In this document: piece by piece, positions 3,779 through 54,900 of the stretch
How positions within the stretch are numbered: position 1 is the first letter of the stretch
Layout of the letters: each line of letters starts with the position of its first letter
Origin: Macrostomum hystrix
Lineage: Eukaryota > Animalia > Platyhelminthes
DNA length: 64,000 nucleotides
Assembly: GCA_950097015.1 (NCBI GenBank)
Contig: CATNEN010000005.1
Span: 5,952,001-6,016,000 of the forward strand
Reading direction: 5' to 3'
Made by a program: the position numbers and the translations under genes
The notes under the pieces: generated by a model
Database searches by the model: none
What the model was told of the DNA's origin: nothing
What the model saw: only the letters and a program-made list of their open reading frames with translations

Positions 3779-6700
3779 ATGGACACCAATGCTAGCGTCC
3801 GTGGACCGGAAGATGCCGGATCAGAGGACCGGGAACTCGAGGATGCAGAATCGCCGGTCTCTACGTGGGAAGACAGTGGATCAATGAGTCAGAGAAGTGA
3901 GGCGGACTCAACTTTCTTTCTGCTGTGCGAAGTAAGCTTCTTAGAGCCAGAGTTCTTCTGGGACATCAATAAAAATAGTCTGCGCAATGACCTTCTTCGA
4001 GCCATAGACAGCAGCGACTCTGAGGAGCTGAGCAGAATATCAGACAGAATCAGAAGAGGACTTCAAGACGATGAGGATGCAGAAGTGAAAGTGCTGCTGC
4101 TTATGTCAGCCGCCAAGCCAGACCTGGAACTGCTGCAGTTCTTGACTGAAAGACACGCCGACTCATGCCTGCAGGTGCGAAGTTCATCAGCGAACAACAT
4201 GCTGCACTTTGTGTGCGGATGCGACAACTCAGATTCAGCAACTGCAGCCTTGGAGCTGATCTACAACAAAGTGGGCAAACAGCTGGTCAAGGAGCTCAAC
4301 AACTCGAAGCAGCTGCCTGTACACATCGCAGCTGAAAACAGCAAGAATCCTGCAGTGTTTCTCTGGCTCATTTCCACCGTCGAGGACAAGAATCTGTTTT
4401 TCGTTCAAGACGATGACGGCTACAGTGCTGTTAGCACTGCATTTTTTAAACAGAACTTGGACACACTCAAACAAGTGACTGAGAAGCTTAGTCTGGCGGA
4501 GTGCCTGGCGGCCAAAACTGCCAAAAATGAAAATATTTGCAAAAGAGCCGCATTCAATACAGCCAATCCTGCAGTGTTTCTCTGGCTCATTTCCACCGTC
4601 GAGGACAAGAATCTGTTTTTCGTTCAAGACGATGACGGCTACAGTGCTGTTAGCATAGCGTTTCTATATCAGAACTTGGACACACTCAAACAAGTGACTG
4701 AGAAGCTTGGTCTGGCGGAGTGCCTGGCGGCAAAAACTGCCAAAAATCAAAATATTTGCCTTCGAGCCGCAGCGAATTCAGCCAATCCTGCAGTGTTTCT
4801 CTGGCTCATTTCCACCGTCGAGGACAAGAATCTGTTTTTCGTTCAAGACGATGACGGCTACAGTGCTGTTAGCATAGCGTTTCTATATCAGAACTTGGAC
4901 ACACTCAAACAAGTGACTGAGAAGCTTGGTCTGGCGGAGTGCCTGGCGGCAAAAACTGCCAAAAATCAAAATATTTGCCTTGCAGCCGCATTCAATACAG
5001 CCAATCCTGCAGTGTTTCTCTGGCTCATTTCCACCGTCGAGGACAAGAATCTGTTTTTCGTTCAAGACGATTACGGCGAAAGTGCTGTTAGCGTAGCATT
5101 TGTAAAGCAGAACTTGGACACACTCAAACAAGTGACTGAGAAGCTTGGTCTGGCGGATTGCCTGGCGACGAAAACTGCCAAAAATCAAAATATTTGCCTT
5201 CGAGCCGCATTCAATCCAGCCAATCCTGCAGTGTTTCTCTGGCTCATTTCCATCGTCGAGGACAAGAATCAGTTTTTCGTTCAAGACGACGACGGCTACA
5301 GTGCTGTTAGCGGAGCATTTGAGAAACAGAACTTGGACACACTCAAACAAGTGACTGAGAAGCTTGGTCTGGCGGAGTGCCTGGCGGCAAAAACTACCAA
5401 AAATCAAAATATTTGCCTTCGAGCCGCATTCAATTCAGCCAATCCTGCAGTGTTTCTCTGGCTCATTTCCACCGTCGAGGACAAGAATCTTTTTTTCGTT
5501 CAAGACGATGACGGCTACAGTGCTGTTAGCATAGCGTTTTATAAGCAGAACTTGGACACTCTCAAACAAGTGACTGAGAAGCTTGGTCTGGCGGAGTGCC
5601 TGGCGGCAAAAACTGCCAAAAATGAAAATATTTGCCTTCGAGCCGCATTCAATACAGCCAATCCTGCAGTGTTTCTCTGGCTCATTTCCACCGTCGAGGA
5701 CAAGAATCTGTTTTCCGTTCAAGACGATTTTGGCAGAGCTGCTGTTAGCCGCGCATTTGAGGAGCAGAATTTGGACACACTCAAACAAGTGACTGAGAAG
5801 CTTGGTCTGGCGGAGTGCCTGGCGGCAAAAACTGCCAAAAATGAAAATATTTGCCTTCGAGCCGCATTCAATACAGCCAATCCTGCAGTGTTTCTCTGGC
5901 TCATTTCCATCGTCGAGGACAAGAATCTGTTTTTCTGTCACGATGATGACGGCTACAGTGCTGTTAGCATAGCATTTTATAAGCAGAACTTGGACACACT
6001 GAAACAAGCGACTGAGAAGCTTGGTCTGGCGGAGTGCCTGGCGGCAAAAACTGCCAAAAATGAAAATATTTGCCTTCGAGCCGCATTCAATACAGCCAAT
6101 CCTGCAGTGTTTCTCTGGCTCATTTTTACCGTCGAGGACAAGAATCTGTTTTTCGTTCAAGACGATGACGGCTACAGTGCTGTTAGCATCGCATTTCAGA
6201 AGCAGAACTTGGACACACTGAAACAAGTGACTGAGAAGCTTGGTCTGGCGGAGTGCCTGGCGGCAAAAACTGCCAAAAATCAAAATATTTGCCTTGCAGC
6301 CGCATTCAATACAGCCAATCCTGCAGTGTTTCTCTGGCTCATTTCCACCGTCGAGGACAAGAATCAGTTTTTCGTTCAAGACGATTACGGCGAAAGTGCT
6401 GTTAGCGTAGCATTTGTAAAGCAGAACTTGGACACACTCAAACAAGTGACTGAGAAGCTTGGTCTGGCGGATTGCCTGGCGACGAAAACTGCCAAAAATC
6501 AAAATATTTGCCTTCGAGCCGCATTCAATCCAGCCAATCCTGCAGTGTTTCTCTGGCTCATTTCCATCGTCGAGGACAAGAATCTGTTTTTCGTTCAAGA
6601 CGACGACGGCTACAGTGCTGTTAGCGGAGCATTTGAGAAACAGAACTTGGACACACTCAAACAAGTGACTGAGAAGCTTGGTCTGGCGGAGTGCCTGGCG

Positions 6701-9700
6701 GCAAAAACTACCAAAAATCAAAATATTTGCCTTCGAGCCGCATTCAATTCAGCCAATCCTGCAGTGTTTCTCTGGCTCATTTCCACCGTCGAGGACAAGA
6801 ATCTGTTTTTCGTTCACAACGATGACGGCTACAGTGCTGTAACCACAGCATTTGAGAAGCAGAATTTGGACACACTCAAACAAGTGACTGAGAAGCTTGG
6901 TCTGGCGGAGTGCCTGGCGGCAGAAAATGCCAAAGGTCAATGTGGTTTGCATGCAGCGGCCTGGAACAGAGAGAATCCAGCCTTATTTCGATGGCTCATT
7001 TCCATCGTCGAGGACAAGAAACTCTTCTTTGAAAAGCATGATGATGGAGCTGCTGCTGTATCCTTTGCCTTTTATCGCCAAGGGTTGGTCACAGTGAAGC
7101 TTTTGACAGACCGTTTTGGACTCAGCGAGTGTTTGAGTTGCATTGACAATCTAAATCGGGATTTGTTTTTTTTTTCCTCACTTAACAGCGTGAACCCGGG
7201 AGTATTTAGCTGGCTTCTAGAGCAGGTCTCCCAGCAATGTCCAGACAAGAAGTCCAGAATCTTCGAGTTGGATTCCAACGGCAACACTCTCCTTCATGCA
7301 CTGTTTAGGAAGGTCGATTTGTTTGGCGATGCTGATGCGCTTGCAGTGCTGATCGGCCGCATCGACTTTCTTTTTGAAAATGAAGTTGATCCAAGAAAAG
7401 AAAACAAATTCAGACTCAACTGTCTGCTTGCCCCTGAATCCAGTGCTTACAATCTCAATCGTCTTTTGCGAGCTCTTCAAAAATCAGCGCATTTGGAAAT
7501 CTTCAGAAATCTGCAAAGAAACTCGGAGGGCCTTCATGCAGCTCATGTCTTCTGCACTCGCTACGATCTCCGAGTTATCGAGAACGATTTGAGCAAGCTG
7601 TGCGGTCTCAGTCCTGACGAGCTCCTTGCAGTCCGAGTTTCTGACGGACCGCTGAAGGACGCGACTTGTCTGCACTTTGCCTGCGAATCCGGTCACAAGT
7701 TGAACATCGAATACCTTCTAAAGAAAGGACGGAAGCTGGAAGATGAGACAGACGCCGGGCAGACGAGTGTCGACTTTGCCTGCAACAAGGCGAAGCTCGA
7801 GGATGTTTTGGACGTTGCAGAGAAGTCAGTTGGTCTCAGAAAACTGCTCAAGCTGGTTGATCCAACGAAGCGAGCTCTGAACCTTCCGGACGTTCAGAGC
7901 GCCCGAGGTCACCTGACTCGTTTCAACGACTCATCGCTGAAGGCCAGCATTGAGGATGATAAATCCAGACGACAGACGAGAGGCAAGGAAGCCGGTGGGA
8001 TGAAAAACGAGAGTCTGCAGGCCGGACACGGAGCTGACAGCATTTCAAAGTCCGAGGATTCGCCAGAAGTGAAAATGCTGTTCAGAGCATTCGAGCTCGA
8101 CTCAAGTGAGATGCTCCGCAGCTTGATCAGTTTGGGCTTCGCCATCGATGAGATCGATGACCAGTTCTCCAGGCATGTCTCAAAACAGATTGGCAATGGG
8201 CGGGAAAGCAGTAAGTCTCCTACAATAGCCAAGCTTCAAAAGTACTTCTCCTCAGAAGGAAGAGATTCTGAAGCTCTCATGCTGATGGAGTACGCAGTGC
8301 TGCTCGAGAAGCCGAAGCTGCTCAATGACCTGATGCTTTTGCCACAGTTTGACATCATCCCACAGACTTTGAGGCTGCTCGTTTATCTCAAGCCCAGAGT
8401 GAAGTCGAGCAATGTTGAGAATCTGAAAAAAGTGCAAGCTCTAGCCTTGAACATTGTCGTCAATGTTCTGGAGCACCTCTACGTGAATGCCGATGAAAAA
8501 CAGCGGAATCTTGTTTTCGACTACCTGAGTGGCTCATTTATGGTGTCAGACGGGCATTCTCAGGTTCGAGTTCCGAGGTTCCCGCCACCATTGGATTATC
8601 TTACCAGAAAAATTTCAAACGATAAAACTGATCACGAAAAAGTGAGCAAAGATGCGAAGACACCAAAAAAGCCATCAGAAAAGAAGTCTGCAGCTGCAGT
8701 GATGTCAGTGATGGATCTGGTGCAGACCCTGGACTGTGACGATGTGTTTGCCACTGACTGCATCAGCCAGTTGGTGGATCGGCAGTGGAACGAGGCTCCA
8801 CCGCTGCCCTGGAGCAGTCCTGCACGCTGCTGCTCATGCAACATACCGCAAAAGGTGACAATTAAACAGCGGTTTATCATCCACTCTGTCTTTTTCCTGG
8901 TCTTTCTGCTCTACTTTGCTTGGTACGTGACGGATTTCAGTCGGACAAAGCAGTTTCCGATTCTAGACGTCGTCCTGTTGGCCTACGCGCTGTCCTTCAC
9001 TCTGCAGGAAGTCAACGACTTGCTGAACAAGCTGTCTATGAAGGACATACGAATTTTCAGAAGGCACATGAGATGTCCTCGCTACTTCACCGACTTCTTC
9101 AACTACTTTGACATGCTCGGCCTGCTGCTGATGTGGGCGGGGCTGGTCCTGAAGCTGCTTGGCCGGCTGAGCGACCCCAGCCTCATGCGCAGCTCTCAGG
9201 TCGTCCTCAGCGTCTCGTTCCTGTTCCTGGGATTCCGCTCCGTGGCCCTGCTCAGCTACTTCAAGGTCACTGGGCCGAACATCAATATGCTGAAGAGCTT
9301 GCTGTTCAAAGACCTGCTGCCATTCTTGATCATCATGCTGGTTCTGATCTTCTCATTTGGCATTTTCTTCTTCAACCTGCTGTTCCCGGCCTTCTCAGAC
9401 CTGACAGACGTCCTGGCTCTCGTGAAGATTTTCACAACGCCCTTGTCGCTGGCCTTAAGCATCTTTGAGCTCTCGCTGTTCGAGTCGTGCAACTCCAGCA
9501 GTCTCGCGACCGGACAGACCTGTGCGGACAGTGGAGGCAACCAGGTGTACAGCCTATTCCTGATGTTCGTGTACGTCTTGCTGGTGAACATTGTGATGTT
9601 CAATCTGCTGATCGCACTGTTCAACCGCACCGTGACAGCGATGGCCAGCAGGGCGGAGGTTCTGTGGCGCAAGAATCTGTTCGAGCTGCTGGAGGAGTTC

Positions 9701-9835
9701 GCAGAGGTCAGTCCGGTTCCGCCGCCGCTGTCGTTCCCGCTCTACGCCTGGAAACTGCTGCGGAGGTGCCGCCCTTCGCACTGCCGACCCTGCGCTGGCA
9801 AAGTCGGTCCTTTTGACGGCTCTGAGATAAGCAAG
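3779..9835 (+). CDS. Ankyrin-repeat TRP-family cation channel, paralog 1, large coding exon (2019 codons; spliced protein ~2201 aa)
   Basis: Uninterrupted ORF; ankyrin motifs (NNMLHFVC, QLPVHIAA, GNTLLHAL, ATCLHFACESGH); 13 x 73-aa units; pre-S1 FATDCISQLVDRQW; six hydrophobic segments; YFTDFFNYFD, GPNINML, NLLIALFNRTV, TRP-domain-like W...EEF...PVPPPL; ends at phase-0 donor AAG/GTAAGA. Confidence 0.92.
4307..7153 (+). repeat. Intragenic array of 13 x 219-bp units (two ankyrin-like repeats per 73-aa unit), gene 1
   Basis: NPA motif codons at 4346 and 6974 are exactly 12 x 219 bp apart; last unit is a diverged cap (GQCGLHAAAWN). Confidence 0.95.
8870..9740 (+). other. S1-S6 transmembrane/pore module and TRP domain of gene 1 (homologous regions ~34429-35299 and ~56847-57717)
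   Basis: Six hydrophobic helices; pore loop with Cys pair flanking an N-glycosylation sequon (CNSSSLATGQTC); S6-TRP helix register matches TRPM-type channels by eye. Confidence 0.85.
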
Positions 9836-10481
9836 GTAAGAGGCCTGGTGGACTGAGGGACTGACTCTGTTACTCACAGATGATAAATGGTCTGAATATA
9901 TATAGCCCTTAGATTCAGTCAGACAATGACCGAATCCAATTTTCGATTGAAAGAACTGATTGTGTGTACATGAATGCAAATGGCTTTGTAGCAAAGACAT
10001 GCTCAGATTATAGTAAGCTGGGGCTGGTCATGAAACTCTTGAGGACTGATTAACAGTAGAAGCAAGGTGAGAGGCCTGGTGAGCACAGGTGAACTGAGGG
10101 GCTGACTATGTTTACTCATATAGGCACTAGATTCAGTCAGACGATGACCGAATCCAATTCAGAGCAATGTTGGTTGTCCTTGTCACCAGGGTCTTCGACG
10201 AGAATCGTTGAATATCTTATCGATGCCGATGTTATGACTCTGGAAGTTGTTTCATCGGATAGAGCGGAAAATGTAGCCCGTCATCTGGATTTTTACAGTG
10301 GTTGGTTGGATATTTTTAAGATAGAGAAAAAAATAAAACATGTGGGTATTTGAATTACTCCCCTTGTGGTCTTTGTACTGTTAAGGATTAGTCAAGCCTC
10401 CAACCCGTTTGCCTGAGTTCTTAAGCCACTTAAACCAAACCGCTAGTTTCAAGGCGCTCTTCCTCACGGCTTCCGTTCCAG
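9836..10481 (+). other. Intron of gene 1 (646 nt, GT-AG, phase 0)
   Basis: GTAAGA donor and TTCCGTTCCAG acceptor; splicing joins exon 1 in frame to an open exon; same sites in all three paralogs. Confidence 0.85.
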
Positions 10482-11030
10482 CCGTGGTGGACGAACCGGA
10501 GCGACTTCAGCGGCTACCCCGAAGACTTCAAGCGCTTCCTGATCTTCCAGGCTGAGCAGCTGCGGCAGCAGCGGCCGCGGCTCCAGCGGGCGGTCGAGCG
10601 GCACAAGGGGGACGTCGATGTGATGAAGGCGCACGTGGAGAACCAGGTCAAGGACCTGCGGGAGGAACTGCTCACGGCTCAGAGAGAGGACACTGAGAAA
10701 ATCGAGACCGATGTGAAGGGCGTCAAAGAAAGTGTTGGAAAGCTGAACGCGGATGTTGGAAAGATGAACGCAGATGTTGGAAAGCTGAACGCGGATGTTG
10801 GAAAGCTGAACGCGGATGTTGGAAAGCTGAACGCGGATGTTGGAAAGCTGAACGCGGATGTTGGAAAGCTGAACGAGGGCGTCAACGAACTCAAAGAGCT
10901 GCAGCTCCGCCAACGAAGACGAGCAAAGCGTCTAGACGATAAGATGACAGAAAATTCCGAGAACCTGCAGCAGCAAATGTCGCAGGTGATGAGCATTCTG
11001 CAGCAACTGCAGCAGCAGCGTCAGCAGTGA
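10482..11030 (+). CDS. Terminal coding exon of gene 1 (182 aa; PWWTNRSDFSGYPEDFKRF... plus coiled coil)
   Basis: Open in phase 0 from the acceptor to TGA; contains ORF-track 10620..11030; GC-rich codon style like exon 1; heptad repeats. Confidence 0.85.
   Translation, partial: PWWTNRSDFSGYPEDFKRFLIFQAEQLRQQRPRLQRAVERHKGDVDVMKAHVENQVKDLREELLTAQREDTEKIETDVKGVKESVGKLNADVGKMNADVGKLNADVGKLNADVGKLNADVGKLNADVGKLNEGVNELKELQLRQRRRAKRLDDKMTENSENLQQQMSQVMSILQQLQQQRQQ
10737..10883 (+). repeat. 21-bp coding repeat, 7 heptads GK(L/M)N(AD/EG)V of the C-terminal coiled coil
   Basis: GTTGGAAAGCTGAACGCGGAT-type tandem repeats; V and L at a/d positions. Confidence 0.9.
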
Positions 11031-12654: not shown

Positions 12655-13170
12655 CTCACATGTTTATCTTGTGTTTACAGACCCAGCTCACATGTTTATC
12701 TTGTGTTTACAGCCCTAGCTCACATGTTTATCTTGTGTTTACAGCCCTAGCTCACATGTTTATCTTGTGTTTACAGCCCCAGCTCACATGTTTATCTTGT
12801 GTTTACAGACCCAGCTCACATGTTTATCTTGTGTTTACAGCCCTAGCTCACATGTTTATCTTGTGTTTACAGCCCTAGCTCACATGTTTATCTTGTGTTT
12901 ACAGCCCAGCTCACATGTTTATCTTGTGTTTACAGACCCAGCTCACATGTTTATCTTGTGTTTACAGCCCTAGCTCACATGTTTATCTTGTGTTTACAGA
13001 CCCAGCTCACATGTTTATCTTGTGTTTACAGCCCTAGCTCACTTGTTTATCTTGTGTTTACAGCCCTAGCTCACATGTTTATCTTGTGTTTACAGCCCAG
13101 CTCACATGTTTATCTTGTGTTTACAGCCCTAGCTCACATGGTTATCTTGTGTTTACGGCCCTAGCTCACT
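12655..13170. repeat. Minisatellite C, 32-bp unit CTCACATGTTTATCTTGTGTTTACAGCCCTAG
   Basis: Direct inspection, ~16 copies; recurs at 38475-38960 and 60058-61085. Confidence 0.95.
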
Positions 13171-17616: not shown

Positions 17617-17762
17617 GGGTTAATTGCTGAACTAGTTTCCATAAACTACAAAACAGTGCTTTACTCTCTTAATGCTGTTATTTCTAACCAACAGTAGGTA
17701 TATTAGTAGTTTGTTAAACTATGCTTTAGCTGGATTTCAGAAACACAATCCTGACAGATAAA

Positions 17763-27726: not shown

Positions 27727-30700
27727 ATGAATTTTTTATTTCTTTGCGACCTCGATTTGTGGCTCGCCGACGCGACCAGTCTGCGCAATGACCTTCTTCG
27801 AGCCATAGACAGCAGCGACTCTGAGGAGCTGAGCAGAATATCAGACAGAATCAGAAAAGGACTTCAAGATCATGAGGATGCAAAAGTGAAAGCGCTGCTG
27901 CTTCTGTCAGCCGCCAAGCCAGACCTGGAACTGCTGCAGTTCTTGACTGAAAGACATGCCGATTCATGCCTGCAGGTGCGAAGTTCATCAGCGAACAACA
28001 TGCTGCACTTTGTGTGCGGATGCATCAACTCAGATTCAGCAACTGCAGCCTTGGAGCTGATCTACAACAAAGTGGGCAAACAGCTGGTCAAGGAGGTCAA
28101 CAACTCGAAGCAGCTGCCTGTACACATCGCAGCTATAAACAGCAAGAATCCTGCAGTGTTTCTCTGGCTCATTTCCTTCGTCGAAGACAAGAATCTGTTT
28201 TTCGTTCAAGACGACGACGGCTACAGTGCTGTTAGCATCGCATTTTTTTATCGGAACTTGGACACACTCAAACAAGTGACTGAGAAGCTTGGTCTGGCGG
28301 AGTGCCTGGCGGCAAAAACTGCCAAAAATCAAAATATTTGCCTTCGAGCCGCATTCAATACAGCCAATCCTGCAGTGTTTCTCTGGCTCATTTCCACCGT
28401 CGAGGACAAGAATCTGTTTTTCGTTCAAGACGATGACGGCTACAGTGCTGTTAGCACAGCGTTTCTACATCAGAACTTGGACACACTCAAACAAGCGACT
28501 GAGAAGCTTGGTCTGGCGGAGTGCCTGGCGGCAAAAACTGCCAAAAATCAAAATATTTGCCTTCGAGCCGCAGCGAATTCAGCCAATCCTGCAGTGTTTC
28601 TCTGGCTCATTTCCACCGTCGAGGACAAGAATCTGTTTTTCGTTCAAGACGATGACGGCGAAAGTGCTGTTGGCAGAGCATTTTATGAGCACAATTTGGA
28701 CACGCTCAAACAAGTGACTGAGAAGCTTGGTCTGGCGGAGTGCCTGGCGGCAAAAACTGCCAAAAATCAAAATATTTGCAAAAGAGCCGCATTCAATACA
28801 GCCAATCCTGCAGTGTTTCTCTGGCTCATTTCCACCGTCGAGGACAAGAATCTGTTTTTCGTTCAAGACGATGACGGCTACAGTGCTGTTAGCACAGCGT
28901 TTCTACATCAGAACTTGGACACACTCAAACAAGTGACTGAGAAGCTTGGTCTGGCGGAGTGCCTGGCGGCAAAAACTGCCAAAAATCAAAATATTTGCTT
29001 TCGAGCCGCATTCAATACAGCCAATCCTGCAGTGTTTCTCTGGCTCATTTCTATCGTCGAGGACAAGAATCTGTTTTTCGTTCAAGACGATGACGGCTAC
29101 AGTGCTGTTAGCACAGCGTTTCTACATCAGAACTTGGACACTCTCAAACAAGTGACTGAGAAGCTTGGTCTGGCGGAGTGCCTGGCGGCAAAAACTGCCA
29201 AAAATGAAAATATTTGCCTTCTTGCCGCATTCAATACAGCCAATCCTGCAGTGTTTCTCTGGCTCATTTCCATCGTCGAGGACAAGAATCAGTTTTTCGT
29301 TCAAGACGACGACGGCTACAGTGCTGTTAGCATCGCATTTTTTAATCGGAACTTGGACACACTCAAACAAGTGACTGAGAAGCTTGGTCTGGCGGAGTGC
29401 CTGGCGGCAAAAACTGCCAAAAATCAAAATATTTGCAAAAGAGCCGCATTCAATACAGCCAATCCTGCAGTGTTTCTCTGGCTCATTTCCATCGTCGAGG
29501 ACAAGAAACTGTTTTTCGTTCAAGACGATGACGGCGAAAGTGCTGTATACACCGCCTTTGATCAGCTGAACTTGGACACTCTCAAACAAGTGACTGAGAA
29601 GCTTGGTCTGGCGGAGTGCCTGGCGGCAAAAACTGCCAAAAATCAAAATATTTGCAAAAGAGCCGCATTCAATACAGCCAATCCTGCAGTGTTTCTCTGG
29701 CTCATTTCCACCGTCGAGGACAAGAAACTGTTTTTCGTTCAAGACGACGACGGCTACAGTGCTGTTAGCATCGCATTTTTTAATCGGAACTTGGACACAC
29801 TCAAACAAGTGACTGAGAAGCTTGGTCTGGCGGAGTGCCTGGCGGCAAAAACTGCCAAAAATCAAAATATTTGCTTTGTAGCCGCATTCAATACAGCCAA
29901 TCCTGCAGTGTTTCTCTGGCTCATTTCCACCGTCGAGGACAAGAATCTGTTTTTCGTTCAAGACGATGACGGCTACAGTGCTCTTAGCGCAGCATTCGAG
30001 AAGCAGAACTTGGACACTCTCAAACAAGTGACTGAGAAGCTTGGTCTGGCGGAGTGCCTGGCGGCAAAAACTGCCAAAAATGAAAATATTTGCCTTCGAG
30101 CCGCATTCAATACAGCCAATCCTGCAGTGTTTCTCTGGCTCATTTCCACCGTCGAGGACAAGAATCTGTTTTTCGTTCAAGACGATGACGGCTACAGTGC
30201 TGTTAGCACTGCATTTGAGAAGCAGAATTTGTACACTCTCAAACAAGTGACTGAGAAGCTTGGTCTGGCGGAGTGCCTGGCGGCAAAAACTGCCAAAAAT
30301 GAAAATATTTGTAAAAGAGCGGCATTCAATACAGCCAATCCTGCAGTGTTTCTCTGGCTCATTTCCACCGTCGAGGACAAGAATCTGTTTTTCGTTCACA
30401 ACGATGACGGCTACAGTGCTGTAACCACAGCATTTGAGAAGCAGAATTTGGACACACTCAAACAAGTGACTGAGAAGCTTGGTCTGGCGGAGTGCCTGGC
30501 GGCAAAAACTGCCAAAAATCAAAATATTTGCCTTCTTGCCGCATTCAATACAGCCAATCCTGCAGTGTTTCTCTGGCTCATTTCCACCGTCGCGGACAAG
30601 AATCTGTTTTTCGTTCAAGACGATGACGGCTACAGTGCTCTTAGCGCAGCATTCGAGAAGCAGAACTTGGACACTCTCAAACAAGTGACTGAGAAGCTTG

Positions 30701-33700
30701 GTCTGGCGGAGTGCCTGGCGGCAAAAACTGCCAAAAATGAAAATATTTGCCTTCTTGCCGCATTCAATACAGCCAATCCTGCAGTGTTTCTCTGGCTCAT
30801 TTCCACCGTCGCGGACAAGAATCTGTTTTTCGTTCAAGACGATGACGGCTACAGTGCTCTTAGCGCAGCATTCGAGAAGCAGAACTTGGACACTCTCAAA
30901 CAAGTGACTGAGAAGCTTGGTCTGGCGGAGTGCCTGGCGGCAAAAACTGCCAAAAATCAAAATATTTGCCTTCGAGCCGCATTCAATACAGCCAATCCTG
31001 CAGTGTTTCTCTGGCTCATTTCCACCGTCGAGGACAAGAATCTGTTTTTCGTTCAAGACGATGACGGCTACAGTGCTCTTAGCGCAGCATTCGAGAAGCA
31101 GAACTTGGACACTCTCAAACAAGTGACTGAGAAGCTTGGTCTGGCGGAGTGCCTGGCGGCAAAAACTGCCAAAAATCAAAATATTTGCCTTCGAGCCGCA
31201 TTCAATACAGCCAATCCTGCAGTGTTTCTCTGGCTCATTTCCACCGTCGAGGACAAGAATCTGTTTTTCGTTCAAGACGATGACGGCTACAGTGCTGTTA
31301 GCACTGCATTTGAGAAGCAGAATTTGTACACTCTCAAACAAGTGACTGAGAAGCTTGGTCTGGCGGAGTGCCTGGCGGCAAAAACTGCCAAAAATGAAAA
31401 TATTTGTAAAAGAGCGGCATTCAATACAGCCAATCCTGCAGTGTTTCTCTGGCTCATTTCCACCGTCGAGGACAAGAATCTGTTTTTCGTTCACAACGAT
31501 GACGGCTACAGTGCTGTTAGCATAGCATTTGAGAAGCAGAATTTGGACACACTCAAACAAGTGACTGAGAAGCTTGGTCTGGCGGAGTGCCTGGCGGCAA
31601 AAACTGCCAAAAATCAAAATATTTGCCTTCTTGCCGCATTCAATACAGCCAATCCTGCAGTGTTTCTCTGGCTCATTTCCACCGTCGCGGACAAGAATCT
31701 GTTTTTCGTTCAAGACGATGACGGCTACAGTGCTCTTAGCGCAGCATTCGAGAAGCAGAACTTGGACACTCTCAAACAAGTGACTGAGAAGCTTGGTCTG
31801 GCGGAGTGCCTGGCGGCAAAAACTGCCAAAAATCAAAATATTTGCAAAAGAGCCGCATTCAATACAGCCAATCCTGCAGTGTTTCTCTGGCTCATTTCCA
31901 TCGTCGAGGACAAGAATCAGTTTTTCGTTCAAGACGACGACGGCTACAGTGCTGTTAGCATAGCATTTTTTAAACAGAACTTGGACACACTCAAGCAAGT
32001 GACTGAGAAGCTTGGTCTGGCGGAGTGCCTGGCGGCAAAAACTGCCAAAAATGAAAATATTTGCATTCGAGCCGCATTCAATACAGCCAATCCTGCAGTG
32101 TTTCTCTGGCTCATTTCCATCGTCGAGGACAAGAATCAGTTTTTCGTTCAAGACGATGACGGCTTCAGTGCTGTTAGCCTCGCGTTTGAGAAGCAGAATT
32201 TGGACACTCTCAAACAAGTGACTGAGAAGCTTGGTCTGGCGGAGTGCCTGGCGGCAAAAACTGCCAAAAATCAAAATATTTGCCTTCGAGCCGCATTCAA
32301 TACAGCCAATCCTGCAGTGTTTCTCTGGCTCATTTCCACCGTCGAGGACAAGAATCAGTTTTTCGTTCAAGACGACGACGGCTACAGTGCTGTTAGCATA
32401 GCATTTTTTAATCAGAACTTGGACACACTCAAGCAAGTGACTGAGAAGCTTGGTCTGGCGGAGTGCCTGGCGGCAAAAACTGCCGAAGGTCAATGTGGTT
32501 TGCATGCAGCGGCCTGGAACAGAGAGAATCCAGCCTTATTTCGATGGCTCATTTCCATCGTCGAGGACAAGAAACTCTTCTTTGAAAAGGCACCAGGTAA
32601 TTTAGGAAGTAATGCCGTCAATAATGCCTTTTATCGCCAAGGGTTGGTCACAGTGAAGCTTTTGACAGACCGTTTTGGACTCAGCGAGTGTTTGAGTTGC
32701 ATTGACAATCTAAATCGGGATTTGTTTTTTTATTCCATTCTGAACAGCGCGAACCCGGCAGTATTTCCCTGGCTTCTCGAGCAGGTCTCCCAGCAATGTC
32801 CAGACAAGAAGTCCAGAATTTACGAGTTGGATTCCAACGGCAACACTCTGCTTCATGCACTGTTTAGGAAGGTCGATTTGTTCGGCGATGTTGATGCGCT
32901 TGCAGTGCTGATTGGCCGCATAAACTTTATTTTTGAAAATGAAGTTGATCCAAGAAAAGAAAACAAATTTAGACTCAACTGTCTGCTTGCCGCTGAATCC
33001 AGTGCTGACAATCTCAATCGTCTTTTGCGAGCTCTTCAAAGATCAGCGCATTTGGAAATCTTCAGAAATCTGCAAAGAAACTCGGAGGGCCTTCACGCAG
33101 CTCATGTCTTCTGCACTCGCTACGAGCTCCGAGTTATCGAGAACGATTTGAGCAAGCTGTGCGGTCTCAGTCCTGACGAGATCCTTGCAGTCCGAGTTTC
33201 TGACGGACCGCTGAAGGATGCAACTTGTCTGCACTTTGCCTGCGAATCCGGTCACAAGTTGAACATGGAATACCTTCTAAAGAAAGGAAGGAAGCTGGAA
33301 GATGAGACAGACGCCGGGCAGACGAGTGTCGACTTTGCCTGCAACAAGGCGAAGCTCGAGGATGTTTTGGATGTTGCAGAGAAGTCAGTTGGTCTCGGAA
33401 AACTGCTCAAGCTGGTTGATCCAACGAAGCGAGCTCTGAACCTTCCGGACGTTCAGAGCGCCCGAGGTCACCTGACTCGATTCAACGACTCATCGCTGAA
33501 GGCCAGCATTGAGGATGATAAATCCAGACGACAGACGAGAGGCAAGGAAGCCGGTGGGATGAAAAACGAGAGTCTGCAGGCCGGACACGGAGCTGACAGT
33601 ATTTCAAAGTCCGAGGATTCGCCAGAAGTGAAAATGCTGTTCAGAGCATTCGAGCTCGACTCAAGTGAGATGCTCCGCAGCTTGATCAGTTTGGGCTTCG

Positions 33701-35394
33701 CCATCGATGAGATCGATGACCAGTTCTCCAGGCATGTCTCAAAGCAAATTGGCAATGGGCGGGAAAGCAGTAAGTCTCCTACAATAGCCAAGCTTCAAAA
33801 GTACTTCTCCTCAGAAGGAAGAGATTCTGAAGCTCTCATGCTGATGGAGTATGCAGTGCTGCTCGAGAAGCCGAAGCTGCTCAATGACCTGATGCTTCTG
33901 CCACAGTTTGACATCATCCCACAGACTTTGAGGCTGCTCGTTTATCTCAAGCCCAGAGTGAAGTCGAGCAATGTTGAGAATCTGAAAAAAGTGCAAGCTC
34001 TAGCCTTGAACATTGTCGTCAATGTTCTGGAGCACCTCTACGTGAATGCTGATGAAGAAGAGCGGAATCTTGTTTTCGACTACCTGAGTGGCTCATTTAT
34101 GGTGTCAGACGGGCATCCTCAGGTTCGAGGTCCGAGGTTCCCGCCACCATTGGATTATCTTACCAGACCAATTTCAAACGATAAAACTGATCACGAAAAA
34201 GTGAGCAAAGATGCGAAGACACCAAAAAAGCCATCAGAAAAGAAGTCTGCAGCTGCAGTGATGTCAGTGATGGATCTGGTGCAGACCCTGGACTGTGACG
34301 ATGTGTTTGCCACTGACTGTATCAGCCAGTTGGTGGATCGGCAGTGGAACGAGGCTCCACCGTTGCCCTGGAGCAGTCCTGCACGCTGCTGCTCATGCAA
34401 CATACCGCAAAAGGTGACAATTAAACAGCGGTTCTTCATCCACTCTGCTTTTTTCCTGGTCTTTCTTCTCTACTTTGCCTGGTACGTGACGGATTTCAGT
34501 CGGACAAAGCAGTTTCCGATTCTAGACGTCGTCCTGTTGGCCTACGCGCTGTCCTTCACTCTGCAGGAAGTCAACGACTTGCTGAACAAGCTGTCTATGA
34601 AGGACATACGAATTTTCGGAAGTCACAGGAGATGTCCTCGCTACTTCACCGACTTCTTCAACTACTTTGACATGCTCGGCCTGCTGCTGATGTGGGCGGG
34701 GCTGGTCCTGAAGCTGCTTGGTCGGCTGAGCGACCCCAGCCTCATGCGCAGCTCTCAGGTCGTCCTCAGCGTCTCGTTCCTGTTCCTGGGATTCCGCTCC
34801 GTGGCCCTGCTCAGCTACTTCAAGGTCACTGGGCCGAACATTAGTATGCTGAAGAGCTTGCTGTTCAAAGACCTGCTGCCATTCTTGATCATCATGCTGG
34901 TTCTGATCTTCTCATTTGGCATTTTCTTCTTCAACCTGCTGTTCCCGGCCTTCTCAGACCTGACAGACGTCCTGGCTCTCGTGAAGATTTTCACAACGCC
35001 CCTGGCGCTGGCCTTAAGCATCTTTGAGCTCTCGCTGTTCGAGTCGTGCAACTCCAGCAGTCTCGCGACCGGACAGACCTGTGCGGACAGTGGAGGCAAC
35101 CAGGTGTACAGCCTATTCCTGATGTTCGTGTACGTCTTGCTGGTAAACATTGTGATGTTCAACCTGCTGATCGCACTGTTCAACCGCACCGTGACAGCGA
35201 TGGCCAGCAGGGCGGAGGTTCTGTGGCGCAAGAATCGGTTCGAGCTGCTGGAGGAGTTCGCAGAGGTCAGTCCGGTTCCGCCGCCGCTGTCGTTCCCGCT
35301 CTACGCCTGGAAACTGCTGCGGAGGTGCCGCCCTTCGCACTGCCGACCCTGCGCTGGCAAAGTCGGTCCTTCTGACGGCTCTGAGAGAAGCAAG
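27727..35394 (+). CDS. Ankyrin-repeat TRP-family cation channel, paralog 2, large coding exon (2556 codons; spliced protein ~2720 aa)
   Basis: Uninterrupted ORF; near-identical to paralog 1 from SLRND onward; 21 x 73-aa units; short divergent N-terminus (start codon less certain); phase-0 donor at 35395. Confidence 0.9.
28108..32712 (+). repeat. Intragenic array of 21 x 219-bp double-ankyrin units, gene 2
   Basis: NPA codons at 28147 and 32527 are 20 x 219 bp apart; cap unit has a 2-aa insertion (APGNLGSNAVNN). Confidence 0.95.
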
Positions 35395-35799
35395 GTAAGA
35401 GGCCTGGTGGACTGAGGGACTGACTCTGTTACTCACAGATGATAAATGGTCTGAATATATAGCCCTTAGATTCAGTCAGACAATGACCGAATCCAATTTT
35501 CAATTGCAAGAACTGATTGTGTGTACATGAATGTAAATGGCTTTATAGCAAAGACATGCTCAGATTATAGTAAGCTGGGGCTGGTCATGAAACTCTTGAG
35601 GACTGATTAACAGTAGAAGCAAGGTGAGAGGCCTGGTGAGCGCAGGTGAACTGAGGGGCTGACTATGTTTACTCATATAGGCACTAGATTGAGTCAGACG
35701 ATGACCGAATCCAATTTGAATGGAAATAACTGGTTGTGTGCACATGATTGCAAATAAGCTCATGTTTCAAGGCGCTCTTCCTCACGGCTTCCGTTCCAG
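35395..35799 (+). other. Intron of gene 2 (405 nt, GT-AG, phase 0)
   Basis: Same donor and acceptor as gene 1; in-frame join. Confidence 0.85.
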
Positions 35800-42547: not shown

Positions 42548-42696
42548 GGGTTAATTGCTGAACTAGTTTCCATAAACTAAACAGTGCTTTACTCTCTTAA
42601 TGCTGTCATTTCTAACCAACAGTAGGTATATTAGAAAAAATGAGACACTGAATGATATAACCAGAACGAAATGGCACGTTGATTAACGTGAAAAAA

Positions 42697-46395: not shown

Positions 46396-47630
46396 TACTT
46401 GCAGTAGTACTGTAGTGATATTGTGCTTGCAGTAGCACTGTAGTGATATTATACTTGCAGTAGTACTGTAGTGATTTTATACTTGCACTAGTACTGTAGT
46501 GATATTATACTTGCAGTAGTACTGTAGTGATATTATACTTGCAGTAGTACTGTAGTGATATTGTACTTGCAGTAGTACTGTAGTGATATTGTACTTGCAG
46601 TAGTACTGTAGTGATATCATACTTGCAGTAGTACTGTAGTGATATTGTGCTTGCAGTAGCACTGTAGTGATATTATACTTGCAGTAGTACTGTAGTGATT
46701 TTATACTTGCACTAGTACTGTAGTGATATTATACTTGCAGTAGTACTGTAGTGATATTATACTTGCAGTAGTACTGTAGTGATATTGTACTTGCAGTAGT
46801 ACTGTAGTGATATTGTACTTGCAGTAGTACTGTAGTGATATAATACTTGCAGTAGTACTGTAGTGATATCATACTTGCAGTAGTACTGTAGTGATATTGT
46901 ACTTGCAGTAGTACTGTAGTGATATTGTACTTGCAGTAGTACTGTAGTAATATAATACTTGCAGTAGTAGTGTAGTGATATCATAATTGCAGTAGTACTG
47001 TAGTGATATTGTAATTGCAGTAGTACTGTAGCGATATTATACTTGCAGTAGTACTGTAGTGATATTGTACTTGCAGTAGTACTGTAGTGATATTGTACTT
47101 GCAGTAGTACTGTAGTGATATTATACTTGCAGTAGTACTGTAGTGATAATGTAATTGCAGTAGTACTGTAGTGATATTATACTTGCAGTAGTACTGTAGT
47201 GATATTGTACTTGCAGTAGTACTGTAGTGATATTGTACTTGCAGTAGTACTGTAGTGATATTATACTTGCAGTAGTACTGTAGTGATATCATACTTGCAG
47301 CAGTACTGTAGTGATATCATACTTGCAGTAGTACTGTAGTGATATTGTACTTGCAGTAGTACTGTAGTGATATCATACTTGCAGTAGTACTGTAGTGATA
47401 TTATACTTGCAGTAGTACTGTAGTGATATCATACTTGCAGTAGTACTGTAGTGATATCATACTTGCAGTAGTACTGTAGTGATATCATACTTGCAGTAGT
47501 ACTGTAGTGATATTATACTTGCAGTAGTACTGTAGTGATATTGTAATTGCAGTAGTACTGTAGCGATATTATACTTGCAGTAGTACTGTAGTGATATTAT
47601 ACTTGCAGTAGTACTGTAGTGATAATTTGC
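46396..47630. repeat. Minisatellite G (28 bp), unit 2
   Basis: ~44 copies. Confidence 0.96.
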
Positions 47631-51950: not shown

Positions 51951-54900
51951 ATGGACACCAATGCTAGCGTCCGTGGACCGGGAGATGCCAGATCAGAGGA
52001 CCGGGAACTCGAGGATGCAGAATCGCCGGTCTCTACGTGGGAAGACAGTGGATCAATGAGTCAGAGAAGTGAGTCGGACTCAACTTTCTCTCTGAGCTAT
52101 GAAAACTTCGTAATGAACCAAGAGCCGGAGTTGCTAGTTTTCTTCTGGGACATCAAGCATGGAGGTGTTGAAAATAGTCTGCGCAATGACCTTCTTCGAG
52201 CCATAGACAAAAGCGACTCTGAGGAGCTGAGCAGAATATCAGACAGAATCAGAAAAGGACTTCAAGACGATGAGGATGCAGAAGTGAAAGCGCTGCTGCT
52301 TCTGTCAGCCGCCGAGCAAGAGCTGGAACTGCTGCAGTTCTTGACTGAAAGACATGCCGACTCATGCCTGCAGGCGCGAAGTTCATCAGCAAACAACATG
52401 CTGCACTTCGTGTGCGGATGCAACAACTCAGATTCAGCAACTGCAGCCTTGGAGCTGATCTATAACAAAGTGGGCAAACAGCTGGTCAAGGAGGTCAACA
52501 ACTCGAAGCAGCTGCCTGTACACATCGCCGCATTCAATACAGCCAATCCTGCAGTGTTTCTCTGGCTCATTTCCACCGTCGAGGACAAGAAACTGTTTTT
52601 CGTTCAAGACGATGACGGCTACAGTGCTGTTAGCATCGCCTTTGATCAGCTGAACTTGGACACACTCAAACAAGTGACTGAGAAGCTTGGTCTGGCGGAG
52701 TGCCTGGCGGCAAAAACTGCCAAAAATGAAAATATTTGCCTTCGAGCCGCAGCGAATTCAGCCAATCCTGCAGTGTTTCTCTGGCTCATTTCCACCGTCG
52801 AGGACAAGAATCTGTTTTTCGTTCAAGACGATGACGGCTACAGTGCTGTTAGCACCGCCTTTGATGAGCTGAACTTGGACACACTCAAACAAGTGACTGA
52901 GAAGCTTGGTCTGGCGGAGTGCCTGGCGGCGAAAACTGCCAAAAATCAAAATATTTGCCTTCTAGCCGCATTCAATACAGGCAATCCTGCAGTGTTTCTC
53001 TGGCTCATTTCCACTGTCGAGGACAAGAATCTGTTTTTCGTTCAAGACGATGACGGCTACAGTGCTGTTAGCACAGCGTTTCTACATCAGAACTTGGACA
53101 CACTCAAGCAAGTGACTGAGAAGCTTGGTCTGGCGGAGTGCCTGGCGGCAAAAACTGCCAAAAATGAAAATATTTGCCTTCGAGCCGCAGCGAATTCAGC
53201 CAATCCTGCAGTGTTTCTCTGGCTCATTTCCACCGTCGAGGACAAGAATCTGTTTTTCGTTCAAGACGATGACGGCTACAGTGCTCTTAGCGCAGCATTC
53301 GAGAAGCAGAACTTGGACACTCTCAAACAAGTGACTGAGAAGCTTGGTCTGGCGGAGTGCCTGGCGGCAAAAACTGCCAAAAATCAAAATATTTGCCTTC
53401 GAGCCGCATTCAATACAGCCAATCCTGCAGTGTTTCTCTGGCTCATTTCCACCGTCGAGGACAAGAATCTGTTTTTCGTTCAAGACGATGACGGCTACAG
53501 TGCTGTTAGCACAGCGTTTCTACATCAGAACTTGGACACACTCAAGCAAGTGACTGAGAAGCTTGGTCTGGCGGAGTGCCTGGCGGCAAAAACTGCCAAA
53601 AATGAAAATATTTGCCTTCGAGCCGCAGCGAATTCAGCCAATCCTGCAGTGTTTCTCTGGCTCATTTCCACCGTCGAGGACAAGAATCTGTTTTTCGTTC
53701 AAGACGATGACGGCTACAGTGCTCTTAGCGCAGCATTCGAGAAGCAGAACTTGGACACTCTCAAACAAGTGACTGAGAAGCTTGGTCTGGCGGAGTGCCT
53801 GGCGGCAAAAACTGCCAAAAATCAAAATATTTGCCTTCGAGCCGCATTCAATACAGCCAATCCTGCAGTGTTTCTCTGGCTCATTTCCACCGTCGAGGAC
53901 AAGAATCTGTTTTTCGTTCAAGACGATGACGGCTACAGTGCTCTTAGCGCAGCATTCGAGAAGCAGAACTTGGACACTCTCAAACAAGTGACTGAGAAGC
54001 TTGGTCTGGCGGAGTGCCTGGCGGCAAAAACTGCCAAAAATCAAAATATTTGCCTTCGAGCCGCATTCAATACAGCCAATCCTGCAGTGTTTCTCTGGCT
54101 CATTTCCACCGTCGAGGACAAGAATCTGTTTTTCGTTCAAGACGATGACGGCTACAGTGCTGTTAGCACTGCATTTGAGAAGCAGAATTTGTACACTCTC
54201 AAACAAGTGACTGAGAAGCTTGGTCTGGCGGAGTGCCTGGCGGCAAAAACTGCCAAAAATCAAAATATTTGTAAAAGAGCGGCATTCAATACAGCCAATC
54301 CTGCAGTGTTTCTCTGGCTCATTTTTACCGTCGAGGACAAGAATCAGTTTTTCGTTCAAGACGATGACGGCGAAAGTGCTGTTAGCACCGCATTTGAGAA
54401 GCTGAACTTGGACACACTCAAACAAGTGACTGCGAAGCTTGGTCTAGCAGAGTGCCTGGCGGCAAAAACTGCCAAAAATGAAAATATTTGTAAAAGAGCC
54501 GCATTCAATACAGCCAATCCTGCAGTGTTTCTCTGGCTCATTTTTACCGTCGAGGACAAGAATCAGTTTTTCGTTCAAGACGATGACGGCGACAGTGCTG
54601 TTTGCATAGCATTTTATAGGCAGAATTTGTACACACTCAAACAAGTGACTGAGAAGCTTGGTCTGGCGGAGTGCCTGGCAGCAAAAATTGCCAAAAATCA
54701 AAATATTTGTCTTGTAGCCGCATTCAATACAGACAATCCTGCAGTGTTTCTCTGGCTCATTTCCACCGTCGAGGACAAGAAACTGTTTTTCGTTCATGAC
54801 GATTATGGCCAAACTGCTGTTAGCCACGCATTTGAGAAGCAGAATTTGGACACTCTCAAACAAGTGACTGAGAAGCTTGGTCTGGCGGAGTGCCTGGCGG

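What the first reader, a model, noticed from the sequence alone, without database searches (positions are those of the whole stretch)
4964..54476. Module shuffling within and between paralogs (higher-order duplications and shared cassettes)
Gene 1 units 4-6 recur as 10-12 (offset 1314 bp). Gene 2 units 9-12 recur as 14-17 (offset 1095 bp). Gene 3 units 3-4 recur as 5-6. The run LR-LSAAFEKQ / LR-STAFEKQNLY / KR is shared by gene 2 units 14-16 and gene 3 units 7-9. VHNDDGYSAVTTAFEKQ is shared by gene 1 unit 12 and gene 2 unit 11, and AFDQL by gene 2 unit 7 and gene 3 unit 1. Half-units recombine independently (the same A half pairs with different B halves). This is direct evidence of unequal crossover or gene conversion building combinatorial arrays.
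Basis: seen in the sequence. Interest (0 to 1): 0.78.

Follow-up and report, generated by a model that had tools for sequence, protein, structure and literature searches.

The report
Shuffled ankyrin repeats in flatworm channel genes
Ten neighbouring flatworm ion-channel genes carry long runs of near-identical 73-residue double-ankyrin units that have been copied in blocks, swapped between genes and recombined within units; this is ordinary tandem-repeat recombination, in an unusual host protein.

Summary
Gene 1: 4907-5490 = 6221-6804 (584 bp, 2 mismatches). Gene 2: 29880-30738 = 30975-31833 (859 bp, 4 mismatches). Gene 3: 53016-53504 = 53454-53942 (489 bp, 0 mismatches). Genes 2 and 3 share 690 bp with 2 mismatches. 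Average units differ at 17 of 219 bases.

The genes are intronless and encode TRPM-like channels. Their 219-bp units fold as two ankyrin repeats each.

I fetched all ten paralogues, which carry 2-38 canonical units. Multi-unit runs exceed shuffled unit orders. Multi-base cassettes occur in all four combinations. PHI tests are significant in the units and in the non-repeat coding part. The 5' and 3' ends of the genes give conflicting trees. Arrays share almost no collinear units, although flanks are about 98% identical.

Recombination within and between paralogues is therefore well supported. Which process acted (unequal exchange, slippage or conversion) is inferred, and nothing points to somatic or programmed rearrangement.

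Variation sits at about 16 codons on the inner helices and preceding loops, with raised dN/dS. The closest analogue is the highly internally conserved repeats of fungal NLRs.

The scan had already noted this family on neighbouring DNA. Raw reads were not checked.

The parts
3779..9856 (+). Gene 1 (C5a): intronless ORF of 2025 aa. It has an N-terminal region, 12 canonical units of 219 bp plus a degenerate terminal unit, further ankyrin repeats and a TRPM-like six-helix pore.
4346..6973 (+). Gene 1 array of 12 canonical units of 219 bp (73 aa, two ankyrin repeats each).
4907..5490 (+). Gene 1 block copy 1. It is 584 bp long and differs at 2 bases from copy 2, which lies 1314 bp (6 units) downstream. 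The copy is shorter than its offset, so it is a dispersed or partly overwritten copy.
6221..6804 (+). Gene 1 block copy 2.
6755..6922 (+). A 168-base half-unit (VHNDD...TTAFEKQ) identical to gene 2 30337-30504, with different flanks on either side.
27727..35415 (+). Gene 2 (C5b): intronless ORF of 2562 aa with 20 canonical units.
28147..32526 (+). Gene 2 array of 20 canonical units.
29880..30738 (+). Gene 2 block copy 1. It is 859 bp long and differs at 4 bases from copy 2, which lies 1095 bp (5 units) downstream.
30975..31833 (+). Gene 2 block copy 2.
30337..30504 (+). Gene 2 half-unit identical to gene 1 6755-6922.
30770..31459 (+). A 690-bp stretch shared with gene 3 (53635-54324) with 2 mismatches. 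It is the only near-identical stretch of 300 bp or more found between different paralogues.
51951..57833 (+). Gene 3 (C5c): intronless ORF of 1960 aa with 11 canonical units.
52545..54953 (+). Gene 3 array of 11 canonical units.
53016..53504 (+). Gene 3 block copy 1. It is 489 bp long and identical to the copy 438 bp downstream. The copy is longer than its offset, so this is a true tandem duplication of a 2-unit block.
53454..53942 (+). Gene 3 block copy 2.
53635..54324 (+). Gene 3 counterpart of the 690-bp stretch shared with gene 2.

Best explanation
The window holds three of ten tandem paralogues in what is very probably the Macrostomum hystrix genome. Five lie at the end of contig C5 and five at the start of C1, spaced about 24 kb apart. 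Each is an intronless gene for a TRPM-like cation channel. By TRP topology its N-terminus is cytoplasmic, and that N-terminus carries an array of 219-bp units, each encoding two ankyrin repeats.

The arrays evolve by germline homologous recombination between units that are about 92% identical. Three processes fit the data:
- In-register unequal exchange or replication slippage duplicates and deletes blocks of 1-10 units within a gene.
- Ectopic gene conversion or unequal crossing-over between paralogues moves stretches of a few hundred bases between genes. It also makes the genes chimeric: the 5' end, the array and the 3' end have different nearest relatives.
- Junctions fall inside units, often in the invariant linker (codons 45-61). 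The ANK-1 variable cluster (codons 20-44) and the ANK-2 cluster (codons 62-73 plus 10-17 of the next unit) therefore reassort.

The scaffold is kept uniform, with dN/dS about 0.2. About 16 codons on the inner helices and the preceding loops stay highly variable. That pattern suggests the diversity of the binding groove is tolerated or favoured.

Shown here: the duplications, the mosaicism, and the fold with its placement of the variable sites. Inferred: the molecular mechanism, germline timing, and any selective value.
For: Anatomy
- Three ORFs carry a 219-bp period at 92% match.
- Pfam finds Ank and Ion_trans. The pore region matches TRPM structures, 6co7 at E 3e-15.
- A four-unit model has pLDDT 95.9 and two helix pairs per unit. 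Its best fold matches are ankyrin solenoids: Espin1-AR with TM 0.76, TRPA1, ankyrin-1 and NOMPC.

Organism
- The best protein hits are M. lignano at 62-65% identity.
- 220,453,370 bases in 42 contigs equals the published M. hystrix assembly.

Family
- There are ten paralogues, and every homogenised array in the genome lies in them. They carry 2-38 canonical units.

Block copies
- Window copies are listed. All ten genes together have 38 segments of 300 bp or more.
- Several segments are longer than their offset, for example C1b with 1021 and 1074 bp at an offset of 876 bp.
- Runs exceed shuffled unit orders.
- All strongly divergent units are terminal, the usual edge effect, apart from the frameshifted C1d unit 9 and C1e units 1-2.

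Exchange
- Genes 2 and 3 share 690 bp.
- Unit types A and H are shared between other genes.
- The nearest neighbour of a unit is in the same gene for 99 of 144 units, against 21 expected.
- Collinear unit matches between arrays number 0-5, although C-terminal flanks are 97-99% identical.
- N- and C-terminal trees conflict. The C-terminal part is mosaic.

Within-unit recombination
- PHI p <= 0.0015.
- Cassette tables show all four combinations of multi-base states that always use identical codons.

Variable sites
- Entropy peaks at codons 26, 31, 34, 35, 62, 66, 67, 70 and 72. These lie in inner helices 28-35 and 64-70 and the loops before them.
- Cross-validated dN at these codons is 2.5-3.1 times the array-wide dS (95% bootstrap 1.3-5.8), against 0.24-0.27 elsewhere.
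Against: - No event was observed, and no population or pedigree data exist here.
- The assembly was made from PacBio reads with canu and polished with Arrow and with short reads (Pilon). Short-read polishing inside near-identical repeats could create or erase single variants, and so inflate both identity and apparent mosaicism. Raw reads were not available.
- 34% of site pairs within 10 bp are already incompatible. Some homoplasy may therefore come from recurrent mutation at hypervariable sites rather than from exchange.
- dN/dS at the positions chosen beforehand (those randomised in DARPins) is only 1.11. Local dS at the variable codons is also raised. Diversifying selection is thus suggested, not proven.
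- The clades tested with AU were named after the trees had been seen.
- Only one of the five structure models was confident.
Confidence: 0.8

Rival explanations
1. Assembly or polishing artefact. The block copies, the identical units and the mosaics were produced by mis-joining of long reads inside arrays, or by short-read polishing that copied variants between near-identical units.
For: The published pipeline used canu on PacBio reads, haplotig purging, then Arrow and Pilon polishing. Paralogue C1d carries two frameshifts that could be polishing errors. The two clusters sit at contig ends: C5 ends at 6.12 Mb, and the C1 cluster lies at 34-160 kb.
Against: Nine of ten ORFs of 1236-3193 aa are intact across arrays of up to 6.3 kb. 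Arrays of 0.4-8.5 kb are within the span of single long reads. Most units are private to one gene, so reads can be placed. Block copies of 500-1170 bp in register cannot be made by base polishing. The same signals appear independently in ten genes and in the non-repeat coding part. The line sequenced was highly inbred, F about 0.998.
Confidence: 0.07
2. No exchange between genes. The shared runs are leftovers of the gene duplications that made the paralogues, and only unit gain and loss within each gene followed. Recurring motifs on different backgrounds are parallel mutations at hypervariable sites.
For: Flanks are only about 2% diverged, so a shared 690-bp run with 2 mismatches between adjacent genes 2 and 3 could be inherited. 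Most near-identical unit pairs lie within one gene. Site incompatibility is high even at very short distance.
Against: With 2% divergence, inherited arrays should be collinear, yet at most 5 units match in order at 6 or fewer differences. Cassettes differing at 3-5 bases always use identical codons and occur in all four combinations, which parallel mutation does not produce. N- and C-terminal trees conflict. The nearest paralogue changes along the C-terminal part, including partners from the other cluster.
Confidence: 0.08
3. A programmed or somatic diversification system. The arrays would be rearranged in somatic or germ cells at high rate to generate a receptor repertoire, as in lamprey variable lymphocyte receptors.
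For: The only support is the pattern itself: a uniform scaffold, hypervariable groove positions, shuffled cassettes and ten clustered genes.
Against: All ten genes are complete germline ORFs with their own arrays. No incomplete receptor gene flanked by donor cassettes was seen, and all arrays in the genome lie inside the ten genes. By TRP topology the array is cytoplasmic. The assembly of a pool of worms gave one consensus per locus. Ordinary recombination suffices.
Confidence: 0.03

Closest known systems
Highly internally conserved WD40, ANK and TPR repeats of fungal NLR-like (STAND) proteins, for example Podospora anserina het-e/het-d/hnwd (PMC2873952, PMC4986451)
   Same: Repeat units are more than 85% identical. 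Repeat number varies. Units are reshuffled within and between paralogous loci by unequal crossing-over and gene conversion. [quoted passage not shown]
   Different: The host protein is an animal TRPM-like ion channel, not a NACHT/NB-ARC NTPase. The exchanged unit is a 73-residue double ankyrin repeat. Allelic repeat-number polymorphism and a recognition function are not shown here. Dyrka et al. report that such repeats are rare in metazoa, 0.8%.
Higher-order repeats and concerted evolution of tandem arrays (satellites, rDNA, minisatellite-containing genes such as spider silk genes)
   Same: Blocks of several units are duplicated in register. Interior units are homogenised and edge units are divergent. 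Paralogues in a tandem cluster exchange sequence.
   Different: Here the array is an open reading frame under purifying selection on the scaffold, with position-specific amino-acid diversity.
Flatworm TRPM channels with N-terminal ankyrin-like repeats (Schistosoma TRPM_MCLZ, PMC10788528)
   Same: A long cytoplasmic N-terminus with multiple ankyrin-like repeats lies in front of a TRPM-type six-helix channel (here).
   Different: Orthology was not tested here. The paper does not describe homogenised arrays, tandem paralogue clusters or repeat shuffling. The M. lignano homologue has the same 73-residue period, but its units are only about 52% identical.
Designed ankyrin repeat proteins (DARPins)
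   Same: A fixed ankyrin scaffold has variation concentrated at loop and inner-helix positions. Codons 24, 26, 34 and 35 correspond to DARPin positions 3, 5, 13 and 14 by my manual alignment to the consensus, and DARPin fusions are among the fold hits.
   Different: This is a natural array with a double-repeat unit and extra short helices. Positions 9, 10 and 15 of each repeat are also variable. dN/dS at the DARPin-type positions is only 1.11.

Membership tests
Fungal-NLR-type highly internally conserved repeat arrays | Repeat units at least 85% identical over at least 100 residues | tested here: met
   Four-unit windows are 86-93% identical in protein. The DNA arrays match at 92%. The mean difference is 17 of 219 bases.
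Fungal-NLR-type highly internally conserved repeat arrays | Repeat-number variation | tested here: met
   The ten paralogues carry 2 to 38 canonical units. Allelic polymorphism was not testable, because only one inbred genome is available.
Fungal-NLR-type highly internally conserved repeat arrays | Reshuffling of units within and between loci | tested here: met
   Block copies, a shared 690-bp run, cassette reassortment, PHI tests and discordant gene ends.
Fungal-NLR-type highly internally conserved repeat arrays | Positive diversifying selection at a few positions of the binding face | tested here: inconclusive
   [quoted passage not shown] Cross-validated dN is 2.5-3.1 times the array-wide dS, but only 1.1-2.0 times the local dS and 1.11 at positions chosen beforehand. 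No coordinates were available to measure exposure.
Fungal-NLR-type highly internally conserved repeat arrays | STAND NTPase (NACHT or NB-ARC) architecture | tested here: not met
   Pfam finds Ank families and Ion_trans and no NTPase domain. The gene works like these arrays but is not a member of that family.
Ankyrin repeat | Stacked helix-turn-helix plus loop repeats of about 33 residues forming a solenoid | tested here: met
   The model has pLDDT 95.9 with two helix pairs per 73-residue unit. Foldseek top hits are all ankyrin solenoids, E down to 4e-9 and TM 0.76. Pfam Ank_2 scores 3e-16 to 5e-22 for the whole proteins. The unit sequence alone gives no significant PDB hit.
TRPM-like channel | Six-helix Ion_trans core most similar to TRPM pores | tested here: met
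   Ion_trans E 3e-7. The best solved relatives are TRPM2-like, TRPM3 and TRPM4, E 3e-15 to 1e-13, over S1 to the TRP region.
TRPM-like channel | N-terminal melastatin homology regions | tested here: not met
   No melastatin or SLOG family was reported by Pfam at E <= 0.01. The matches to TRPM structures cover only the channel part.
TRPM_MCLZ orthologue group | Orthology to Schistosoma TRPM_MCLZ | not tested
   Only the published description of ankyrin-like repeats plus a TRPM core was read.
Higher-order tandem repeat made by unequal exchange | Duplicated block at least as long as its offset, in register | tested here: met
   Gene 3 has 489 bp at an offset of 438. C1b has 1021 and 1074 bp at an offset of 876, and C1d has 838 bp at an offset of 438. 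The block copies of genes 1 and 2 are shorter than their offsets.

The most novel reading that the evidence does not exclude
The ten-gene cluster is a germline-encoded repertoire of ion channels whose cytoplasmic ankyrin grooves are diversified by repeat shuffling under selection. It would be an animal, channel-coupled counterpart of the fungal NLR repeat system. Different arrays would bind different intracellular partners or foreign molecules and gate the pore accordingly.
Probability: 0.15. Interest if true: 0.8.

Novelty: new member of a known kind. Interest (0 to 1): 0.5.

Why it matters
Repeat shuffling with a fixed scaffold and a few hypervariable positions is known mainly from fungal NLRs, plant LRR genes and lamprey receptors, where it serves recognition. 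Here the same evolutionary regime appears on the cytoplasmic ankyrin domain of a metazoan TRP-type channel family. Array length ranges from 4 to about 76 array ankyrin repeats between neighbouring paralogues.

That raises a testable question: are array length and groove composition tuned for mechanical tethering, for partner binding, or for neither? It also gives a natural set of length and sequence variants for studying ankyrin domains in channels.

There is a practical point too. These arrays are easy to mis-assemble or mis-annotate, and the gene trees of such families are unreliable because the genes are mosaics.

Tried and rejected
- Sequence search of four units against solved structures gave no significant ankyrin hit. 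The fold had to be shown by prediction and fold search.
- I considered that the C5 and C1 clusters might be two haplotypes of one locus. I rejected this because no pair of genes is near-identical, N-terminal types come in a different order, array lengths differ greatly, and the line is inbred.
- I looked for decay of unit similarity with distance inside arrays. None was found: the mean difference is 14.3-16.3 at lags 1-11 and 12.7 at lag 12.
- A search for near-identical stretches of 300 bp or more between genes found only the gene 2 / gene 3 pair. Exchange of long tracts between arrays is therefore rare or quickly obscured.
- The long antisense ORFs inside the arrays were set aside as stop-free frames of a repeated unit.
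- I did not try to assign each event to crossover or conversion. The data do not allow it.
- The large representative protein search, the Atlas search and collection scans were not used, because the family was already placed.
- One literature look-up failed on a term that was too short.


Full report
**What is in the window.** Three long intronless ORFs lie on the plus strand about 24 kb apart: 3779-9856, 27727-35415 and 51951-57833, encoding 2025, 2562 and 1960 aa. The same ordered set of minisatellites separates them. Each ORF contains an array with a 219-bp period at 92% match: 12.2, 20.2 and 11.3 copies.

The proteins have an acidic N-terminal region, then the array, then further ankyrin repeats, then a six-helix channel. 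Pfam reports Ank families and Ion_trans. The channel part is most similar to solved TRPM pores; the best is 6co7 at E 3e-15, and the match is restricted to the transmembrane and TRP region.

**Organism.** The nearest proteins are all from Macrostomum lignano, at 62-65% identity. The assembly has 220,453,370 bases in 42 contigs. Those are the figures published for Macrostomum hystrix, inbred line SR1. That assembly used canu on PacBio reads, haplotig purging, and Arrow plus Pilon polishing. I take the window to be from that assembly. It is a free-living flatworm, not human material.

**What a unit is.** The unit sequence alone finds nothing significant among solved structures. An AlphaFold model of four units, built on an alignment of 32 four-unit stretches from seven of the ten paralogues, reached pLDDT 95.9 in the best model; the other four models were poor.

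The model shows two helix pairs plus a short extra helix per 73 residues. Its best structural matches are ankyrin solenoids: Espin1-AR with TM 0.76, Drosophila TRPA1, ankyrin-1, AnkB and NOMPC. Each unit is therefore two ankyrin repeats. ANK-1 runs roughly over codons 20-52. ANK-2 runs over codons 53-73 plus 1-19 of the next unit.

**Check of the observation.** I cut units at the NPAVF motif and compared them all. The mean difference is 17.4 of 219 bases.

- Gene 1: 4907-5490 equals 6221-6804 (584 bp, 2 mismatches, offset 1314).
- Gene 2: 29880-30738 equals 30975-31833 (859 bp, 4 mismatches, offset 1095).
- Gene 3: 53016-53504 equals 53454-53942 (489 bp, no mismatch, offset 438).
- Gene 2 30770-31459 equals gene 3 53635-54324 (690 bp, 2 mismatches).
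- The VHNDD...TTAFEKQ half-unit is identical over 168 bases in genes 1 and 2, with different flanks.
- The AFDQL sharing is only a 27-base island.

Two corrections apply. The gene 1 copy covers 2.7 units rather than three. The AFDQL case is weak on its own.

Runs of adjacent matching units number 8 in the window, against 0.82 (maximum 5) when unit order is shuffled within genes.

**The whole family.** The genome holds ten paralogues. Five lie at the end of contig C5, including the three of the window, and five at the start of C1. All homogenised arrays in the genome lie inside them. I fetched the other seven.

ORFs range from 1236 to 3193 aa, and arrays from 2 to 38 canonical units. One copy, C1d, has 39 units and two frameshifts.

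When units are typed at 2 or fewer differences, each array shows block repeats:
- IJ....IJ in gene 1
- CG..CCG in gene 2
- KCKCCG in gene 3
- LM.LM in C5e
- OPQROPQR and more complex patterns in C1b
- DVDWD...DVDW in C1d

There are 38 within-gene segments of 300 bp or more with few mismatches. Several are longer than their offset, which is the signature of true tandem block duplication. Others are shorter, giving dispersed or partly overwritten copies. Apart from the frameshifted C1d unit 9 and C1e units 1-2, all strongly divergent units are the last one or two of an array. This is the usual edge effect of arrays homogenised by unequal exchange. Many segment starts fall at unit phase 0.5-0.6, in the invariant linker at codons 45-61.

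**Arrays against flanks.** The 2.7 kb of non-repeat coding sequence after the array is 97-99% identical among nine of the paralogues and 92-96% for C5d. If arrays had simply been inherited with the gene duplications, units should match in order with about 4 differences each. Instead the longest collinear chain of units at 6 or fewer differences is 5 (genes 2 and 3) and 0-2 for other pairs.

A unit's nearest neighbour lies in the same gene for 99 of 144 units, against 21 expected. Arrays therefore turn over mainly by events inside each gene, and much faster than the flanks diverge. Alternatively, the flanks are kept alike by conversion.

**Exchange between paralogues.** The 420 bp before the array and the 2.7 kb after it give conflicting trees. 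The 5' end pairs C5b with C1a, C5a with C1d, and C5d with C1b. The 3' end pairs C5b with C1d.

The 3' data reject C5b+C1a (AU p 9e-4), and the 5' data reject C5b+C1d (p about 1e-68). The clades were named after the trees were seen. The 3' part is itself mosaic: PHI p < 0.0005, 46% of informative site pairs are incompatible, and the nearest paralogue changes along the sequence and includes genes of the other cluster.

**Recombination inside units.** Among 111 distinct canonical units the PHI test gives p <= 0.0015 at windows of 60 and 100 bases. A stronger argument comes from the variable motifs, which are multi-base cassettes that always use the same codons:
- DQL is GATCAGCTG in all 16 cases, in 5 genes.
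- KR is AAAAGA in all 35 cases, in 7 genes.
- DYGQT is one 15-mer in all 18 cases.

The ANK-1 cassettes at codons 20-36 are tightly linked to each other. They occur with LR, KR and LL at codons 66-67 in nearly all combinations and in several genes. Seventeen of 78 haplotypes of codons 22-44 occur with two or more haplotypes of codons 62-73. Parallel mutation cannot produce four combinations of states that differ at 3-5 bases.

**Where the variation lies.** Twenty-six of 73 positions are invariant in about 100 distinct units. Entropy is concentrated at codons 11, 16, 17, 20, 21, 24, 26, 31, 34, 35, 36, 62, 66, 67, 70 and 72.

In the model, codons 28-35 and 64-70 are the first (inner) helices of the two repeats, and 20-27 and 56-63 are the loops before them. 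By my alignment to the ankyrin consensus, the variable sites are repeat positions 3, 5, 9/10, 13, 14 and 15 in both repeats. This is an inference, since no coordinates were available.

The dN/dS values are:

| Codon set | dN/dS |
|---|---|
| All 73 codons | 0.69 |
| The 57 quiet codons | 0.19 |
| The 16 variable codons (circular choice) | 1.57 |
| Twelve DARPin-type positions chosen beforehand | 1.11 |

I also chose variable codons in one cluster and measured them in the other. That gives dN 2.5-3.1 times the array-wide dS (bootstrap 1.3-5.8), but only 1.1-2.0 times the local dS, which is itself raised. This fits long-maintained diversity at groove positions. It does not prove positive selection.

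In the M. lignano homologue the same 73-residue period exists, but units are only about 52% identical and vary at most positions. The homogenised state is therefore a feature of this lineage.

**Interpretation.** The best explanation is ordinary germline homologous recombination in and between tandem arrays. In-register unequal exchange or slippage makes and removes blocks. Ectopic conversion or crossover between paralogues moves tracts and makes chimeric genes. Junctions inside units reassort the two variable clusters. I put this at 0.8.

The rivals are:
- an assembly or polishing artefact (0.07);
- inheritance without exchange, plus parallel mutation (0.08);
- a programmed or somatic system (0.03).

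The first rival cannot be excluded without raw reads, because short-read polishing in repeats is a real risk. However, block copies of 0.5-1.2 kb, intact ORFs in nine of ten genes and independent signals in non-repeat sequence argue against it.

**Comparison with what is known.** The closest analogue is the highly internally conserved WD40, ANK and TPR arrays of fungal NLR-like proteins. Those units are more than 85% identical and vary in number. They are reshuffled within and between loci by unequal crossing-over and conversion, and they carry hypervariable positions on the concave face.

The present arrays meet those features except two: proven selection, and the NTPase architecture, which is absent. 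They work like that system but are not a member of that family. Dyrka et al. found such repeats to be rare in metazoa.

The combination of ankyrin-like repeats with a TRPM-type core is already published for the schistosome channel TRPM_MCLZ.

The scan had already noted this family on neighbouring DNA about 44 kb beyond the window and on this same stretch. My analyses up to one search were made before I saw those notes.

**Verdict.** The mechanism is a known kind in a new host protein, and its functional meaning is open.

Noticed in passing
window 1-64000 (for example 10733-10875 / 36060-36143; 12655-13169 / 38473-38957 / 60059-61084; 17761-19371 / 42689-44521; 21223-22126 / 46393-47624): The whole 24-kb gene-plus-spacer segment is tandemly repeated. 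The same ordered set of minisatellites (periods 21, 23/24, 32, 22, 28 and 20) recurs with very different copy numbers in each spacer.
   Followed up: partly
G000:C1:127400-139700 (L023, L019, L020): Paralogue C1d has the longest array (39 units) and two frameshifts. One lies in the N-terminal region. The other is a 1-base insertion in unit 9. It is either a pseudogene or a polishing error.
   Followed up: partly
G000:C5 end (5.956-6.067 Mb of 6.121 Mb) and G000:C1 start (34-160 kb): The two five-gene clusters sit at contig ends and exchange sequence with each other. They may be one locus split by the assembly, or two subterminal loci.
   Followed up: no
window 29122-32505 (-), 5435-6721 (-), 53634-55061 (-): Long antisense ORFs of up to 1127 aa lie inside the arrays. 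They are most simply a stop-free frame of the repeated unit, and no evidence of a gene was found.
   Followed up: no
window 7229-9853 and the matching parts of the other nine genes: The non-repeat C-terminal coding part is a mosaic of tracts whose nearest paralogue changes every few hundred bases. For example, gene 3 is closest to C1c, then to gene 1, then to C5e with 0-1 differences per 400 bp.
   Followed up: yes
G000:C38:14320741-14323676 (-) and G000:C5:4758214-4759704 (+): More distant relatives of the channel (66-77% DNA identity) lie elsewhere in the genome. The C38 copy also has a weak match to the repeat unit (66%).
   Followed up: no
window 27727-27800 and L013 (C1a): Gene 2 and C1a start with a different N-terminal sequence (MNFLF...) from the other genes (MDTNAS...). 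This suggests an alternative 5' end, or a missing upstream exon, in these two copies.
   Followed up: no
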